A stretch of DNA of 64,000 nt from Corallochytrium limacisporum Hawaii (lineage: Eukaryota; Protista; Pluriformea), in the NCBI GenBank assembly GCA_002811645.1, contig PDIP01000064.1:129188-193187 (forward strand). Direction: 5' to 3'. Below the pieces are notes generated by a model that did no database searches, was not told where the DNA came from, and worked only from the letters and a program-made list of their open reading frames with translations. Below are positions 13,532 through 19,953 of the stretch, piece after piece (position 1 is the stretch's first letter; each line of letters starts with the position of its first letter). The position numbers and the translations under genes are program-made.

Positions 13532-13851
13532 ACATGGGGAAAACCGGGAGGGAACGAGATAGGGGGCTTCATGAGCACTTTGGAAGTTGGGCGCCGGGGG
13601 AAGCCTCGAGCACCAGTATGACAGTTCACTGTGCCAATGGCTTGATTTTACTTCTCCTTTGCGTGGACTCTATGTGTGTGACATTTGTGCCTTCTGTGCT
13701 GTGCCGTGTCGTGCCTGGAATTAGATAAATATTCAGGTATCAAGGTACGAGATTAAGGTTACAGTGTAAGAGTTAGAGAGATTGCTCAGGCGGTCGAATC
13801 ACATTGCTCAGCAAGCAGTTCGATTTGTAGGTAGTCACTCTCAAGAAAGCA

Positions 13852-15174
13852 ATGCCAGGCGAAACAGTCGTGAACAACAGCCAGCTGGAAAATCAACCGC
13901 AAGAAAAAAAGCCGGTCGTGAAGAACGAGGAAAATAAGATGGACGACGAACTAGCAAAATTAGCGCAATGGAGCGAGGATCCTCCGGAGGAACAGAACGG
14001 CACGAACGCCGACGTCGCTGCCGCTCCCGCCATGAACCCTGAAGAGGCCAAGAAAACCGGAAACGAAAAGATTCAGCTCGGTCAGAAATTGTACGCTCTT
14101 CGTGACTTCAGTCGGGCAGCCGATTCCTTTGAAGCGGCTCTGGAAATTCTGGTGCCCGTCCATGGTGACATGGCTTTGGAACTGGCCAACGTATACTACA
14201 TGTATGGTACCTCGATCCTGGAACAGAACCGGGCAGAAGGCAATATTTTTGGGGGTGGTGGTAGTGGTGCTGACAAGGACGCAGAAGAAGCCGAAGACGA
14301 TGACGACGCAGACATTTTGGGCGTTGAGGGTGACCGAACCAAGGCTCTGGGTGCCTCTGGCCACGAGGAAGAGATTGACCAGGCCAAACCCACAGAAGAG
14401 GCAGAAGTCGATCTGGTGGAGGCCAAGAGTAAGGGCAAAGATGCGGCTGACGGCGATGGTGGTGCCCAAGCTGCCGACGAAGAGGCTATTGAGAATCTAC
14501 AAATTGCGTTTGAGTGTCTAGAGACAGCCCGTGTGATTTGGGAGAAGGCGAGTGGGGAGGATACATCATCCACCGAACACTTGCCGATGCTCATCAAGTG
14601 TCATGAGCGTCTGGCTGAGTGTGCGGCAGAAAGCAATGCCTATCCTCAGGCCATCGCAGACTATGCTGAGGGCATTAAACTGCACATTAAACTACATGGA
14701 GACAAAGACGGGCGAGGTCGGGCCCACCTCCACTTCCAAAAGGCTCTGATGCACGAAAATGTCAAGGAGCACAAGGAAGCCATCTCGAACCTGGAAAAGG
14801 CGATTGAAATCTTGGAGAGTCGCAAGCTAACAATGAAAGCTCAGGCCACAACAGGAGGTGACAAGGCTGCACAGGAACTAAAAGATCTCGACGCCATTAT
14901 TGGCGACGTTAATCGACGCTTGCAGGAAGTGCGCGTGGATGAGAAGGAGTTCGCCAAGCTCACCAGCAACCTGAAGGACAGCGTAAAGGAAGCTTTCGGT
15001 GGACTGGTCAGTGCAGCCGTAGGAAGTTCCGCAGGCGGCAGTAGTAGTGCCGGTGCGTCAGCTGGCAACGCACCCGCTGCGCCCGCCAACGACCTAACCT
15101 CACTCGTCCGGAAGCGTAAGAAGGAGGCAGTGAAGGAAGATGAGGAACCCCAAAAGGCTCCCAAGACAGAGTAA
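13852..15174 (+). CDS. NASP: NASP/Sim3/Hif1 histone chaperone (SHNi-TPR)
   Basis: TPR helices interrupted by an acidic stretch (ANVYYMYGTSILE...ENLQIAFECLETARVI), ESNAYPQAIADY, C-terminal NDLTSLVRKRK NLS. Confidence 0.92.
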   Translation: MPGETVVNNSQLENQPQEKKPVVKNEENKMDDELAKLAQWSEDPPEEQNGTNADVAAAPAMNPEEAKKTGNEKIQLGQKLYALRDFSRAADSFEAALEILVPVHGDMALELANVYYMYGTSILEQNRAEGNIFGGGGSGADKDAEEAEDDDDADILGVEGDRTKALGASGHEEEIDQAKPTEEAEVDLVEAKSKGKDAADGDGGAQAADEEAIENLQIAFECLETARVIWEKASGEDTSSTEHLPMLIKCHERLAECAAESNAYPQAIADYAEGIKLHIKLHGDKDGRGRAHLHFQKALMHENVKEHKEAISNLEKAIEILESRKLTMKAQATTGGDKAAQELKDLDAIIGDVNRRLQEVRVDEKEFAKLTSNLKDSVKEAFGGLVSAAVGSSAGGSSSAGASAGNAPAAPANDLTSLVRKRKKEAVKEDEEPQKAPKTE

Positions 15175-15236
15175 ATCATGATCATATGCAAAACGTATCA
15201 AAGAAGACTTCTGTGAATGTTTCTTCGGTGTATTAT

Positions 15237-16662
15237 TCAGAGACGCCTGAACTTAATCGCGATCGAACCCGATGCGCCTGGACCTAGTTCTCCTGTGCGA
15301 ATTTCCTTGTTCCGCGGGTCGCTGCCCTTGGGGTTGACTTTGCCCCGCAGGGAGGGGGGCGGCACAATGACGCCCGTGTCGTAGTCAAGCTGTGGCTTCT
15401 GATGCTCAAGCCACTCCTCCGATTCAACGGTTTTGCTACTGCTGCGTTCTACTCGAAAGTTGACGGGAAAGCCACCATGGTTGAAGAGAGTAATGGTCTT
15501 CTCTGCGAGGGCCTGTTTGCCTTGTAGTTCAGATTCGTCAGTAGTGCCGCCTCTGATACACTTTAGAGACTGTACCTCAGTCACTTCGTCGTCAATTGGT
15601 AACATGACGTCGCCAAAGTCCAGTACAGGCACCTCTGGTTTGTACTCTAAGATAGGACGAATGCTGCTGCCCTTGAGGACCAAGTTCATGTTCTGTTGAT
15701 TTCCGAAAGAAAGGCCCATTCCTGATGGTAATTGGCTTCCTCGCTGGGTTCAAAAGCCAGGAACAGTGGGATACTCCCCCCAGGTGGAATATCTCGCAGC
15801 GAGGCCTTCAGGAAGAACGGACCGTGGGGGTCTAAGCAGTAGCCCGAGGTCTCCAAATACTCAGTCTGCGAGTGGTTGTGCAGGAGTACAACCTTGGTGG
15901 TGCACTCTCCAAGAGGTAAATGTCCAAAATCAATGCACTCATGGCTTGAAGACAGTCCGTCCTTTGTAGCATATGAATGGCTGCCATTGCCACTGATTGT
16001 TATGAAAGGCCGAGTAGCATACCCTTCACTAAGAGACGTACATGAATGCGCTCCGCCGCAGGCTTTCGTAGATTCATGTATCTCTTTCGTGTCTCAGCTG
16101 TGGTTAAGGAAGGATCACGATGCAGATCATCGCTCAGCTCGGCTGCAGGACTCCAGAAAAATTGAATCTCTTGAGCAATGGATCGAATCCTTTGTTCTTC
16201 CCTCATGGCCCCTGTCTTTGAAGCAGGCGTTTGCCGATTAGACAGATCTTGGGCAACACGCTTCGTGTTCTCACTCTCTTTGGCTGTCAATTGTACGCTA
16301 CCGCTGTTCTGTTTGCCTGAGCCGACACGCTTACCGCTGGCGGAACGGGCTCCTTTCTTGCCTCCACTCTTGCCGTGTCATGTTCCGCAGTCAGTGCGTC
16401 TTCTTGTCTACCTACCAGAGGCTGTCCCTGACCATTAGCAGTATTGCAATGTGCAACGCCAGGAACAATCCCTGAGGACGGCGTCGTCTTGGCCCTAACT
16501 CTATTCGATCTTTTTCGTCGTACCATGCCAAAATATGTGCTACCTGCAGTTCGTTGTGGTGATCACCCTCAGCCACATTCTCCACCGCTCCCGAGGCAGC
16601 CATTGCTGACTGTGAGTTGTGCTCAGTTGAATGGTGCGGTGCAATCGGGTTCCAGATCCCAT
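15237..16662 (-). pseudogene. Truncated, multiply frameshifted ASH (ASPM-SPD2-Hydin) Ig-domain gene, CFAP74-like
   Basis: Stitched frames give TTPSSGIVPG...YATRPFITISG...IDFGHLPLGECTTKVVLLHN...CLDPHGPFFLKASLRDIPPGGSIPLFLAFEP...NLVLKG...VLDFGDV...KTITLFNHGGFPVNF...GELGPGASGSIAIKF. The frame 15686-16093 is missing from the ORF track. The similarity to CFAP74 is from my recollection of that family, not from a search. Confidence 0.7.
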
Positions 16663-17322
16663 TTTAAGTTTCCAAAATTATCGTATAATTTTAATATGTT
16701 CAAACATCCATATTGTTGTGTTCGTGAGAAATAGCCCATGAACATGGTTGATGGCGTATTGAGGTCCGCTGGGCTTCAGTGTTGTCTGCGTGTCCCATTT
16801 CTGGCACTTGTGTCCCTTGAAAACCCCTTCCCCCCCTCTCCTCCGCGGCCCGTTCGGTCGCACGAAGGGTCTGTCGGGCCGGCCATAGGTCTCCAGAGCC
16901 ACCGATTCGAGAATATATTTCGCCAAAAAAAAAATGAGACCTTAATTTCGCATTTTCCGTACCCAATGTGGGGGCGATCGGGTAGTGCAATACTGAAGGT
17001 ACCGAAAGCCAATGGGTGAACGGGTCGTGCCAGCCGCCTTCCGGCTAAGCGACGACATTACGCAACTTGATGGGTCCTAATACCACACGTCCACACCTTT
17101 TGCCCGCACCTTGGGTATTCGCGGTCGACCGGCTTTTACGATTCGCGCACAACAATTACTAAGCGGTGAGGGAGGGTCTCCCGCACAACATCCGCACACC
17201 CATGATGACGGTCAGGGGCATGGGTGTTCGTACGAGTATTTCAGCCGGGAGGCGCCAGAGAAGTTTGAATATTGCAATCAGGTCAGTTCAATACGGGTTA
17301 TTGACAGGACCACATATACGCT

Positions 17323-18180
17323 ATGTTCAATTATTGGATTGACCGTGAAAACCAGGGCTATCAGCCAGCGATTTTGATAACCGGCGGTGCTTCTGGAATT
17401 GGGGCACAAACCGCTCGGCGTTTCCATCGGGCAGGTTGGTTTGTGGGTGTTGTGGATCTCAATGTCGACGGACTCAGCAATCTTGCAGATGAGCTAGGAA
17501 ATAAGAATGTATTCAAGAGAGGTTGCGATGTCACCAGTGTGGAAGATGTCGAAGCGACTTTGAAGGAGTTCACTGACGCGTCTAAAGGAAGGCTTGACAT
17601 AATGTTCAACTGTGCCGGTGTCCTTAGCACCGGCCCTTTCATTAATCTTGACATCAAGCGCCACATTCTACACTGTGATGTAAACTCCAAGGGGGTTGTC
17701 ATATGCACAAAGTTAGCCATCCCGTACCTGACTAGGACCGGTACAAACACTGGTCTCATCAACATGGCCAGCGCGAGCAGTTTCTTTGGCGTGCCAGAGT
17801 TTGCCTCATACTCGGCCAGCAAGCATTTTGTGAAAGGCTTGACGGAAGCTCTTAACATCGAATTGTATGACCAAGGCATTAATGTGTTTGCTATCAGTCC
17901 TGGATTCGTGGACACTCCGATGGTGCACGGGACCAACGAATTGAATACGACTTGCCAGCGTATGAACCCGGATTTAATATCTGTAGACGATGTCGTTGAT
18001 GATGTCTGGGACGCTGCACACCGCTACGGTACCATTGGGTACCACTACAAGCCGGGCTTGAAGACAAAACTCCTTGCCAGTGTCGTCAGTTTCGGGAACG
18101 TGTTCTTCACGCAGAGCTTTTCACGTTTCATCATTCTTACCTTGAACTGGACCACCCAGGCGCGTGAGATCACCAAATGA
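17323..18180 (+). CDS. Classical short-chain dehydrogenase/reductase
   Basis: ILITGGASGIG Rossmann motif, FNCAG, catalytic YSASK, ISPGFVDTPM. Confidence 0.93.
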   Translation: MFNYWIDRENQGYQPAILITGGASGIGAQTARRFHRAGWFVGVVDLNVDGLSNLADELGNKNVFKRGCDVTSVEDVEATLKEFTDASKGRLDIMFNCAGVLSTGPFINLDIKRHILHCDVNSKGVVICTKLAIPYLTRTGTNTGLINMASASSFFGVPEFASYSASKHFVKGLTEALNIELYDQGINVFAISPGFVDTPMVHGTNELNTTCQRMNPDLISVDDVVDDVWDAAHRYGTIGYHYKPGLKTKLLASVVSFGNVFFTQSFSRFIILTLNWTTQAREITK

Positions 18181-18252
18181 GACTTGCATTACAGTCTATT
18201 GTGTGCCAAAAAGCAAGCTTCTTTATTGCTATATTTTTATTAGTGCCTTGAC

Positions 18253-19953
18253 TTAGAACTTGAAAGAGTATTTATGGCGACGATGGCCGCCGCCGCCGCC
18301 GCCGCCGCCGCCTCCTCCGCGTCTATGACCGCCGAATCCGGAACCACCGAATCCACCAGATCCGCCAAAGCCTCCAAAACCACCAAAACCTCCGAAACCT
18401 CCGAAGCCTCCGAAGCCGCCGGGTCCGCCACCGCCACCGCGACCTCCTCCAGCTTCGTCGTCGAAGGGATCAATACCACGGTCAAATTGTTTGCGTTTCT
18501 CTGGGTCACCAAGTACTTCCTTGGCCAACTGGATATCGTGGTACTTCTTCTCTGCAAGATCTTTGTCATCTCCTTCAAATTTGTCGGGATGCCATTCAAG
18601 ACTCAGTTTACGGTAAGCCTTATTGATCTCCTTCTTGGTAGCACTACGGGAGACGCCTAGAATCTTGTAGTAGTCTCGCTTGCCCGCTTGCTTCTTGAGT
18701 TTCTCTGCTTCTCGTAACTTGCTCTCAACAAACTGGTCATTACCACGTTTTTCCAGGACGGCCTTATAATCCAAAATAGCTTCATCGTACATTTCATTAG
18801 CAACCCGGGCCTGTGCACGGTTGAGACGCGAGTCAATGTCTTCTTCGTCCTGTTCAAAAGCAGTGCTGCACCACTTGCCTGCGGCCGCTGCCCGATCGCT
18901 CTTGACAAGGAGGTCACACCATTGGGCAGCAACTCTGCCCATAACCTTTGCGCTATATTTGGAACCCAAAGATTCTTGTAACTTGTCAATTTGTGTCAGT
19001 TCTTCTTCTGCAACCTTCCACTTTTTTGCCTCCGCGGCCTTTACACTCTTCTTGAGTAGTTTTTGCAATTTCTTGAGGTCCTTGAATTTCGGATGACACT
19101 CAGGATGTTCGGGATCATGTGTTAGACACACCCTCAGATGACGCAATGCTTCGTCAATGTCGCCAGTCATTTCGTAGTGCAGGGCGTACATCTGAAGTGC
19201 CTGACTCACCGGATCCGCCTTACCAACTACGGTAGCGGTTTCCATCTGGCGGATGGCATCCTGGACACGACCAAGCTTCAGGTAAATAGAAGCCAGAGTG
19301 TTACGTACCTTTTCGTTACTTGGGCTCATATCCTTCAGCTTCTCATAGACTTCGAGTGCACCTTGGTAGTTTCCCTTATCAAACTTAGCCTTTCCTGAGG
19401 TTTCCAGTTGCTTTGCCTTGTTCAATTTCTTCATCAGGGTCTGAACCTCGTCAAGAGTCTGTTCAATGATCTTCAACTCCTCCTGATCGGCATCTGGCTT
19501 GTCTGCTTCAAGCAAGTCCTTTGTTGCAATCAAATATTCACGACTTTTTGCCCAATGGCCTAGACCCAGAGTCGTCTCTGCGGCCCGAAGGTACGCCGGC
19601 ATGAAGGCAGGGTCTGCATCCATGGCAATTTCAAAGTCAGAGAGGGCGTCACTGTAACGATTTAGAACCATTTTACACAGTCCTCGACGAAAGAACGAAC
19701 GACAATTCTGTTGATCTTGCAGAGTCACACCGTCTTCTTCTTCCTCGTCATCCTTTTGCATTATCATGACATCTATGCCGTCCAGAGCCACGTTGTACGA
19801 CTCCAGGGCAACCTTGAAATTTCGGGCATTGAACTCGCGCTCCGCTGTTTCCAGTGCCTCCTTACGCTCTTCGGGCGTAATATTTTGCCCGAAGGTCAAC
19901 TGGACCAGCACTAGGAGCGCAACCCATACCCATAATGAAACCTGTTTGGCCAT
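18253..19953 (-). CDS. DNAJC3: DNAJC3/P58IPK ER-lumenal TPR co-chaperone
   Basis: Signal peptide, tandem TPRs, CLTHDPEHPEC, J-domain RDYYKILGV...WHPDK, Gly/Phe-rich tail. Confidence 0.93.
   Translation of the reverse strand: MAKQVSLWVWVALLVLVQLTFGQNITPEERKEALETAEREFNARNFKVALESYNVALDGIDVMIMQKDDEEEEDGVTLQDQQNCRSFFRRGLCKMVLNRYSDALSDFEIAMDADPAFMPAYLRAAETTLGLGHWAKSREYLIATKDLLEADKPDADQEELKIIEQTLDEVQTLMKKLNKAKQLETSGKAKFDKGNYQGALEVYEKLKDMSPSNEKVRNTLASIYLKLGRVQDAIRQMETATVVGKADPVSQALQMYALHYEMTGDIDEALRHLRVCLTHDPEHPECHPKFKDLKKLQKLLKKSVKAAEAKKWKVAEEELTQIDKLQESLGSKYSAKVMGRVAAQWCDLLVKSDRAAAAGKWCSTAFEQDEEDIDSRLNRAQARVANEMYDEAILDYKAVLEKRGNDQFVESKLREAEKLKKQAGKRDYYKILGVSRSATKKEINKAYRKLSLEWHPDKFEGDDKDLAEKKYHDIQLAKEVLGDPEKRKQFDRGIDPFDDEAGGGRGGGGGPGGFGGFGGFGGFGGFGGFGGSGGFGGSGFGGHRRGGGGGGGGGGGHRRHKYSFKF
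18286..18440 (-). repeat. Coding (GGF)n / poly-Gly low-complexity repeat in the DNAJC3 tail
   Basis: 9-nt period (ccaaagcct/ccgaaacct) and a (gcc)n run; encodes GGFGGFGGF...GGGGGGGGGGG. Confidence 0.9.

What the first reader, a model, noticed from the sequence alone, without database searches (positions are those of the whole stretch)
15237..16662. Flagellar central-apparatus gene (CFAP74-like) caught decaying, with up to five frameshifts all in the -1 direction
Seen: six overlapping minus-strand segments (ATG 16662; ORFs at 16603, 16526 and 16290; a hidden frame 16093-15686; ORF 15719) cycle through frames 0-1-2-0-1-2. Every junction needs one added nucleotide, e.g. CAT CAG GA|ATG GGC at ~15720 and AAG GG|TAT GCT at ~16022. 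No nonsense substitution has to be read through, and the neighbouring genes are intact. The last two junctions are the best anchored; the first three are tentative. Knowledge (recalled): the stitched protein has tandem ASH Ig-folds and the L[DN]PxGPF motif of CFAP74, a ~1,500-aa motile-cilium central-pair protein. Only ~470 codons are present here, ending 62 nt from the NASP stop. Inference: a fossil of recent loss of flagellar motility with deletion-biased decay. The one-directional shifts leave open insertional editing, non-canonical micro-introns or recoding; I see no canonical slippery heptamer.
Basis: partly seen in the sequence, partly recalled or inferred. Interest (0 to 1): 0.8.

Follow-up and report, generated by a model that had tools for sequence, protein, structure and literature searches.

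The report
Dead CFAP74 flagellar gene relic
This is a transcribed but dead, truncated leftover of CFAP74, a gene for the central shaft of a beating flagellum, in a single-celled relative of animals (almost certainly Corallochytrium limacisporum), which argues against the published idea that this organism hides a swimming stage.

Summary
On the minus strand, 16663-15240 is tiled by five long open stretches in frames 0-2-1-0-2. That is 4 frame changes, against 11.4 +/- 2.3 in shuffles.

A profile of 17 CFAP74 orthologues matches the last three stretches colinearly (121 bits when read through with X at the breaks). This anchors the break at ~15700 strongly and the break at ~16022 moderately. The two breaks upstream rest only on codon usage. 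The ATG at 16662 has no support.

The relic is cut at both ends. The first ~2/3 and the last ~170-200 residues of CFAP74 are missing here and from the whole 24.1-Mb assembly.

Independent contigs of the DNA reads are identical, so this is not an assembly error. A same-strain transcript contig (15194-16695) is colinear and unedited, so there is no splicing and no inserted bases.

A second strain shares all four breaks. It adds a 1-nt insertion inside the last reading frame and differs 4.3 times more here than in the neighbouring genes.

Verdict: a unitary, still-transcribed CFAP74 pseudogene. Editing, micro-introns and recoding are rejected. A bias towards small deletions is not demonstrable (4 against 1).

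The scan has noted the same kind of relic at many other loci of this genome, but not at this one.

The parts
15194..16716 (-). Transcribed unit of the relic. The strand is inferred, not shown by the contigs.
   Evidence: X3 transcript contig of 1502 nt covers 15194-16695 with 0 differences and 0 gaps. The X4 contig reaches 16716. Neither run has RNA cover at 16820-17141. An AATAAT lies at the stop codon, about 40 nt before the contig end.
15240..15698 (-). Piece C (frame 2): end of one Ig domain plus the first two thirds of the next CFAP74 Ig domain. It ends in a stop three codons after profile position 909 of 1104.
   Evidence: E 1.6e-7 alone, at hmm 813-844 and 847-909. B+X+C scores 113.5 bits against 78.1 for B alone; 0 of 200 shuffles reach it. 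Codon-usage log-likelihood is +7 to +19.
15689..15749 (-). Window holding frame break 4 (frame 0 to frame 2; net -1 nt). The profile alignments abut at 15698-15701.
   Evidence: hmm 812 ends in frame 0 at 15701 and hmm 813 starts in frame 2 at 15698. No GT..AG and no slippery heptamer in the window. No indel here in any DNA or RNA contig.
15701..16021 (-). Piece B (frame 0): a complete ASH/Ig domain of CFAP74 with the LDPHGPF motif. The conserved residues visible in the alignment are kept.
   Evidence: Pfam ASH E 1.3e-6, 28.9 bits against a cut-off of 27. FAP74 7n6g_3H residues 1452-1523 at E 2.5e-6, and CFAP74 9ijj_C residues 1244-1308. CFAP74 profile E 2.6e-24 at hmm 727-812. Conserved columns.
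16003..16093 (-). Window holding frame break 3 (frame 1 to frame 0; net -1 nt), most likely near 16022.
   Evidence: A+X+B scores 85.8 bits. Shuffled A gives mean 76.6, sd 1.5, max 84.5; 0 of 200 reach it. The profile envelope of frame 0 starts at 16021. Only a 14-nt GT..AG lies here.
16024..16377 (-). Piece A (frame 1): probable remnant of the poorly conserved charged linker and the last strand of the preceding Ig domain. Homology is weak.
   Evidence: Alone E 1.4, though at the colinear place hmm 644-663. It adds about 8 bits when joined to B. Codon-usage log-likelihood is +2 to +12.5.
16290..16562 (-). Open stretch in frame 2 (91 codons): possible former coding sequence, with no homology.
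   Evidence: open stretch, no profile match. (log-likelihood +5.4 at 16460-16341). (upstream part 16663-16024: 2 switches, 35 of 1000 shuffles do as well).
16415..16663 (-). Open stretch in frame 0 (83 codons): possible former coding sequence, with no homology.
   Evidence: log-likelihood +9.4 and +4.9 at 16640-16461; nothing coding-like upstream of 16640.
15477..15477 (-). Lesion private to the second strain: a substitution plus a 1-nt insertion, which shifts the frame inside piece C.
   Evidence: tables 3 and 4 (X4: A>T, and T put in behind 15477). (His>Gln). The window's own reading is continuous with the profile here, so the insertion is the derived state.

Best explanation
The locus is a unitary pseudogene, the only copy in the genome, of CFAP74/FAP74. 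CFAP74 is an Ig/ASH-repeat protein of the C1d projection of the flagellar central apparatus.

What survives is an internal piece, positions ~640-909 of a 1104-position orthologue profile. That is roughly one and two-thirds Ig domains plus a linker.

Large deletions removed the N-terminal ~2/3 and the last ~170-200 residues. The surviving part carries two homology-anchored frame breaks and two more suggested by codon usage, each equal to a net loss of one nucleotide.

The locus is still transcribed as an unspliced, unedited ~1.5-kb RNA but cannot make CFAP74. It drifts neutrally: a second strain shares the breaks, has one more frameshift, and has mostly amino-acid-changing differences at a 4-fold higher density than in the neighbouring genes.

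Shown: homology, breaks, truncation, uniqueness in the assembly, identity of DNA and RNA contigs, the strain differences.

Inferred: the strand of the transcript, that the upstream 600 nt were once CFAP74 coding sequence, and that the cause is loss of the motile flagellum in this lineage.
For: Identity:
- Pfam ASH above cut-off.
- phmmer against solved structures ranks FAP74 (E 2.5e-6) and CFAP74 (1.4e-3) above HYDIN, CFAP65 and FAP47.
- The best single-domain hits are proteins carrying Ig_CFAP74_1st/3rd/4th, matched at the equivalent domain.
- The CFAP74 profile gives E 2.6e-24 and 1.6e-7 for two pieces in different frames, at abutting profile positions 727-812 and 813-909.
- Read through with X at the breaks, the score is 121.1 bits. 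Both junctions beat 200 of 200 shuffles.

Truncation:
- Orthologues run 170-200 residues beyond position 909.
- Nothing else in the 64-kb window matches the profile.
- Nothing else in the genome matches a full-length orthologue or the profile, and Ig_CFAP74_1st finds nothing.

Not an artefact, and not corrected in RNA:
- Two DNA contigs at depths 181 and 750 are identical to the assembly.
- The X3 RNA contig 15194-16695 has no differences, gaps or joints.
- X4 has no indel at any junction.
- The published assembly is Illumina plus SPAdes (PMC5560861).

Neutral drift:
- X4 differs at 14 of 1523 sites here against 5 of 2335 in the flanks (odds ratio 4.3, p 0.0035).
- 7 of 8 differences in the homology-supported frames change the amino acid, and there is a 1-nt insertion at 15477.

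Context:
- Only one intact dynein heavy chain with DHC_N2 (4907-aa frame), plus one broken fragment.
- No RSP3.
- The only other ASH locus is ASPM.
Against: - The three upstream segments have no detectable homology, so the number of breaks (2 to 4) is uncertain.
- The runs called RNA are labelled as a guess. Contig limits at gene ends and the empty intergenic gap argue for RNA, but contigs give neither strand nor level, and they drop rare isoforms.
- The DNA runs may be the assembly's own reads, so they exclude assembler error but not a strain-specific lesion. The second strain's sharing of the breaks covers that point.
- The complete ASH domain (15701-16021) keeps every conserved residue and has no difference between strains (about 2.8 expected, P~0.06). 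This could hint at residual constraint.
- The assembly is about 83% BUSCO-complete (PMC5560861), so absence elsewhere in the genome is not absolute.
Confidence: 0.9

Rival explanations
1. Assembly or sequencing indels. The gene would be intact and the frame breaks would be errors.
For: All breaks go in the same direction, as homopolymer deletions in long-read assemblies do. Short homopolymers (3-5 nt) lie in every junction window.
Against: Independent contigs of two DNA runs (depths 181 and 750), one RNA run of the same strain and one of another strain all show the same sequence at all four junctions. The assembly is Illumina-based (PMC5560861). The neighbours have no breaks. Errors would not explain the missing 5' and 3' parts.
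Confidence: 0.01
2. A live gene expressed by an unusual route: insertional RNA editing, micro-introns, or repeated programmed -1 ribosomal frameshifting.
For: The locus is transcribed. All breaks need the same -1 correction. No in-frame stop has to be read through.
Against: RNA contigs are colinear with the DNA, with no inserted letters and no joints. No junction window holds an X XXY YYZ heptamer, and the best-anchored window holds no GT..AG. The profile alignments abut, leaving no room for an intron. The second strain has a +1 insertion inside the last frame. Even if read through, the product would lack about 70% of CFAP74 and would end inside an Ig domain.
Confidence: 0.02
3. A relic of another ciliary ASH-repeat gene (HYDIN, CFAP65, CFAP47, DLEC1) rather than CFAP74.
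For: Single ASH/Ig domains cross-match between these families. The language-model look-up gives generic HYDIN/CFAP65-type Ig clusters.
Against: FAP74 and CFAP74 rank first among solved structures. The best single-domain hits are CFAP74 orthologues at the equivalent domain. Three consecutive pieces follow the CFAP74 profile in order, including the family's LDPxGPF motif.
Confidence: 0.04
4. A relic co-opted for a new role, for example a non-coding RNA convergent with and overlapping the NASP-like 3' end, or a short Ig-like protein from the 160-codon ORF.
For: A stable transcript is assembled in both strains. The X3 contigs of the two convergent units overlap by 10 nt at 15194-15203. The ASH domain shows no difference between strains.
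Against: The 160-codon ORF is frameshifted in the second strain and sits behind about 1 kb of leader with many ATGs. Substitution density is 4-fold above the neighbours. No Rfam family matches. The ORFs are not in the public protein collection.
Confidence: 0.04

Closest known systems
CFAP74 / FAP74 (C1d projection of the flagellar central apparatus; structures 7n6g, 7sqc, 9ijj)
   Same: ASH/Ig repeat fold. Colinear match to the C-terminal third of the protein. LDPxGPF motif and the other conserved residues of that domain are present. Best hit in both the sequence and the profile searches.
   Different: Only about a quarter of the protein remains. There are 2-4 frame breaks, a stop inside an Ig domain, and none of the family-specific first to fourth Ig domains.
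Unitary pseudogenes of ciliary genes left after loss of the flagellum, including the other flagellar relics that this scan noted in the same genome
   Same: Single-copy relic, truncated and frameshifted, beside intact housekeeping neighbours. The genome lacks intact axonemal dynein heavy chains and RSP3.
   Different: Here there is also direct two-strain evidence of neutral drift, and evidence that the relic is still transcribed. Transcription would let transcriptome-based surveys count it as present.
HYDIN, CFAP65, CFAP47, DLEC1 (other ciliary ASH/Ig-repeat proteins) and ASPM
   Same: Same domain superfamily. Weak cross-matches.
   Different: Lower scores and no colinear multi-piece match. 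The genome's only other ASH-family hit is an intact ASPM-type spindle protein with CH and IQ domains.
Programmed -1 ribosomal frameshifting and insertional RNA editing
   Same: Each would correct breaks of this direction.
   Different: No slippery heptamers, RNA equals DNA, and the other strain has an extra break in the opposite direction.

Membership tests
CFAP74/FAP74 | ASH / Ig-like (PapD-like) repeat domain | tested here: met
   PF15780 ASH: E 1.3e-6, 28.9 bits against a cut-off of 27, on window:15689-16093:-.
CFAP74/FAP74 | Best matches are CFAP74 orthologues, at the equivalent domain | tested here: met
   PDB: FAP74 residues 1452-1523 of 1940 and CFAP74 residues 1244-1308 of 1578 rank first. 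Best single-domain hits are proteins carrying Ig_CFAP74_1st/3rd/4th.
CFAP74/FAP74 | Colinear match over several consecutive domains of a family profile | tested here: met
   hmm 640-844 and 847-909 across three reading frames, 121.1 bits.
CFAP74/FAP74 | Conserved LDPxGPF...ALRP..PG motif | tested here: met
   The motif is in the consensus of 11 orthologues and is aligned to LDPHGPF...SLRDIPPGG in piece B.
CFAP74/FAP74 | Family-specific first to fourth Ig domains (PF24771, PF24770, PF24778, PF24798) | tested here: not met
   PF24771 finds nothing in the genome. The full-length orthologue and the profile hit only this locus, and only at the C-terminal part. At the locus itself PF24770 and PF24798 give only weak sub-threshold matches.
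CFAP74/FAP74 | Intact reading frame of about 1100-1900 residues | tested here: not met
   Frame breaks at ~15700 and ~16022. Stop three codons after hmm 909. About 265-380 homologous codons remain. It is therefore filed as a pseudogene of the family, not as a working member.
Programmed -1 frameshift site | Slippery X XXY YYZ heptamer in the incoming frame | tested here: not met
   None in any of the four junction windows.
Spliceosomal intron | Sequence absent from the transcript, with GT..AG ends | tested here: not met
   RNA contigs are colinear, with no joints. No GT..AG in 15689-15749. Minor isoforms cannot be excluded from contigs.

The most novel reading that the evidence does not exclude
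The relic is not just debris. Its ~1.5-kb RNA, convergent with and overlapping the 3' end of the NASP-like histone-chaperone gene, or the fully conserved ASH domain within it, may have been kept for a new role. That would explain why transcription and this one domain survive while the rest of the gene is gone.
Probability: 0.04. Interest if true: 0.55.

Novelty: new member of a known kind. Interest (0 to 1): 0.5.

Why it matters
[quoted passage not shown] 2015).

This locus shows that a central-apparatus gene exists there only as a transcribed, truncated, frameshifted relic that drifts neutrally between the two known strains. Transcriptome-based presence calls can therefore be misled by expressed pseudogenes.

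Two other lines point the same way: I found no intact axonemal dynein heavy chain or RSP3, and the scan noted many other flagellar relics in this genome. Together these support a fairly recent loss of the motile flagellum in this lineage.

The relics also offer a way to date that loss. Lesions shared by the India and Hawaii strains can be counted against lesions private to one strain.

Tried and rejected
- tblastn of 137 homologues against the region found almost nothing outside the ASH domain, so a profile was needed.
- phmmer of the last piece against solved structures found nothing. Pairwise phmmer of pieces A and C against the homologues was not significant.
- A possible further fragment in the 62-nt gap before the NASP-like stop (15232-15185, frame 0) looked similar by eye. 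It adds no score (21.7 against 21.9 bits; 91 of 200 shuffles do as well), so I rejected it.
- No paralogue or other CFAP74 part was found in the genome.
- No Rfam family matches at 14800-17400.
- The three ATG-started ORFs are not in the public protein collection. A spliced public gene model cannot be excluded.
- The language-model atlas gave only generic ciliary Ig clusters.
- The organism's name could not be read from any tool. It rests on the genome size (24,109,830 bases against the published 24.1 Mb), the two near-identical strains, and earlier scan notes.
- The joined read-through, with X at each break, was used only inside local scripts against my own profile.
- No structure was predicted. 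The profile evidence made it unnecessary.

Full report
**What is there**

The window comes from a 24,109,830-base, 286-contig eukaryotic assembly. It has long intron-free genes and about 50% G+C.

The size matches the published 24.1-Mb Illumina/SPAdes assembly of Corallochytrium limacisporum (PMC5560861). Earlier notes of this scan name the same organism. I treat the name as very likely, though no tool stated it.

The locus lies between a NASP-like SHNi-TPR gene (13852-15174, +) and a short-chain dehydrogenase gene (17323-18180, +). Both are intact.

With frame f defined by codon starts at 17350-f-3k, the open stretches are:

| Frame | Coordinates |
|---|---|
| f0 | 16663-16415 |
| f2 | 16562-16290 |
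| f1 | 16377-16003 |
| f0 | 16093-15689 |
| f2 | 15749-15240 |

Each change of frame equals a net loss of one nucleotide. Crossing 16663-15240 without a stop needs 4 switches. Dinucleotide shuffles need 11.4 +/- 2.3, and 2 of 1000 do as well.

**Identity**

- The frame-0 piece is an ASH domain: PF15780, E 1.3e-6, above the curated cut-off.
- Against all solved structures its best matches are Chlamydomonas FAP74 (residues 1452-1523 of 1940, E 2.5e-6) and mammalian CFAP74 (1244-1308 of 1578). HYDIN, CFAP65 and FAP47 come after them.
- A search of 1.84 billion representatives gave 137 hits.
- Those with the best single-domain scores carry the Pfam domains Ig_CFAP74_1st, 3rd and 4th. They match at the equivalent C-terminal domain.

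I built a profile of 17 such orthologues with 1104 match states. It gives:

- E 2.6e-24 for the frame-0 piece, at positions 727-812.
- E 1.6e-7 for the frame-2 piece, at positions 813-844 and 847-909.

The two pieces are therefore colinear and abut at 15698-15701. The family's LDPxGPF...ALRP..PG motif is present as LDPHGPF...SLRDIPPGG.

**The breaks**

I read the pieces through with X at each break. This was done only in a local script against my own profile; the database tools received the pieces apart, by reference. Scores:

| Pieces | Bits | Shuffle control |
|---|---|---|
| B alone | 78.1 | - |
| B+X+C | 113.5 | 0 of 200 shuffles reach it |
| A+X+B | 85.8 | shuffled A: mean 76.6, sd 1.5, max 84.5; 0 of 200 reach it |
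| A+X+B+X+C | 121.1 | - |

So the break at ~15700 is firmly anchored and the break at ~16022 moderately.

The two upstream breaks, in windows 16290-16377 and 16415-16562, have no homology behind them. They have partial support from a codon-usage log-likelihood trained on 12 long ORFs of the window. That score is positive in exactly the frames f0, f2, f1, f0, f2 along 16640-15260, and nowhere upstream of 16640. They also have weak open-frame statistics (35 of 1000 shuffles do as well). In orthologues the corresponding region is a poorly conserved charged linker, so missing homology is expected there.

The ATG at 16662 (f1) has no support.

**Truncation**

Orthologues continue 170-200 residues past profile position 909. 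Here a stop follows three codons later, and the convergent NASP-like gene ends 62 nt further on. A candidate remnant in that gap adds no score.

Profile positions 1-640, well over 1000 residues in full-length orthologues, are absent from:

- the locus itself;
- the 64-kb window;
- the whole assembly, whether searched with a full-length orthologue, a profile of 11 orthologues or PF24771.

The relic is thus the only CFAP74-derived sequence in the assembly.

**Artefact, editing, splicing and recoding**

- Contigs built independently from two DNA runs (depths 181 and 750) are identical to the window across 13600-18274. These runs may be the assembly's own reads.
- A 2015 run that behaves as a transcriptome gives a 1502-nt contig at 15194-16695 with no difference, gap or joint. 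Its contigs start and stop at gene ends, and there is no cover at 16820-17141.
- So the locus is transcribed, and the RNA carries the same breaks.
- No junction window holds an X XXY YYZ heptamer.
- The window 15689-15749 holds no GT..AG, and 16003-16093 holds only a 14-nt one.
- No Rfam family matches.

**A second strain**

Another 2015 run, from a different sample and study, gives a contig at 13834-16716 with 18 substitutions and one indel. Two nearly identical strains, India and Hawaii, are known (bioRxiv 10.1101/2020.11.12.379420).

- It has no indel at any of the four junctions, so the breaks predate the strain split.
- It has a 1-nt insertion at 15477, inside piece C, where the window's reading follows the profile. 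This is a private, derived frameshift in the opposite direction.
- Substitutions number 14 in 1523 nt of the relic against 5 in 2335 nt of the flanking genes (odds ratio 4.3, p 0.0035).
- In the homology-supported frames, 7 of 8 change the amino acid.

This is what neutral drift looks like.

One oddity remains. The complete ASH domain (15701-16021) has no difference between strains, where about 2.8 would be expected (P about 0.06).

**Rough age (inference)**

In this locus the strains differ by 1 indel per 14 substitutions. Four shared small indels then suggest a few per cent of neutral divergence since constraint was lost, several times the divergence between strains. This estimate is very uncertain.

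'Deletion bias' among small indels (4 against 1) is not significant. The large deletions are evident.

**Genome context**

My own tests:

- PF08393 (DHC_N2) finds one intact dynein heavy chain in a 4907-residue frame, presumably the cytoplasmic one, and one fragment interrupted by a stop.
- RSP3 is not found.
- IFT57 lies in two adjacent pieces in different frames. No plausible intron joins them; a 13-nt GT..AG is the only candidate.
- The only other ASH-family locus is an intact ASPM-type protein with ASH, CH and IQ domains.

These agree with the scan's earlier notes of many dead flagellar genes in this genome, including PF20/SPAG16, SPAG6, DLEC1, DRC7, RSPH1 and dyneins. I used those notes as leads and checked them only in part.

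The literature infers a cryptic flagellate stage from flagellar toolkit genes (PMC7147346, PMC12731214). The life-cycle imaging study does not mention a flagellum at all.

**Verdict**

This is a real, single-copy, still-transcribed, doubly truncated and frameshifted CFAP74 pseudogene. It is a new member of a known kind: a unitary pseudogene left after loss of a trait.

The alternatives of editing, micro-introns and recoding are rejected.

The interest lies mainly in what the relic says about flagellar loss in a close relative of animals, together with the others in this genome. It also shows that expressed pseudogenes can inflate presence calls made from transcriptomes.

Noticed in passing
L009 (G000:C143:188300-190400), pieces at 189399-189830 and 188816-189352, minus strand: IFT57 (PF10498) is split into two adjacent open frames in different reading frames. 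The first ends in a stop inside the acidic linker. The only GT..AG that bridges them is 13 nt long. This is probably another frameshifted ciliary gene.
   Followed up: partly
G000:C261:50910-51308, minus strand (L010): The second and only other DHC_N2 match in the genome covers just positions 17-155 of 403 and has an internal TAG. This is a dynein heavy-chain fragment. The sole intact heavy chain sits in a 4907-residue frame on C184.
   Followed up: no
L008 (G000:C171:183500-193499), open frame from 5084 to beyond the locus end: An intact ASPM-type spindle protein (ASH, two CH domains, many IQ motifs). It is the only other ASH-family hit in the genome.
   Followed up: partly
G000:C284:25001-25222 and G000:C25:156436-156690: Single HYDIN/CFAP65/VesB-like Ig domains inside long open frames of 881 and 3111 residues. 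Their identity was not determined. There is one domain each, so neither is HYDIN.
   Followed up: no
window 13874, 13931, 14761: All three differences between strains in the NASP-like gene change the amino acid (N>S, E>G, V>I). Both differences in the dehydrogenase gene are synonymous.
   Followed up: no
window 14800-17400: Five marine metagenome or metatranscriptome runs (2023-2025) hold 5-8% of the sampled words of this stretch. The organism or a close relative may therefore be present in environmental samples.
   Followed up: no
window 15194-15203: The transcript contigs of the NASP-like gene and of the relic overlap by 10 nt at their 3' ends. In the second strain they assemble into one contig.
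   Followed up: no
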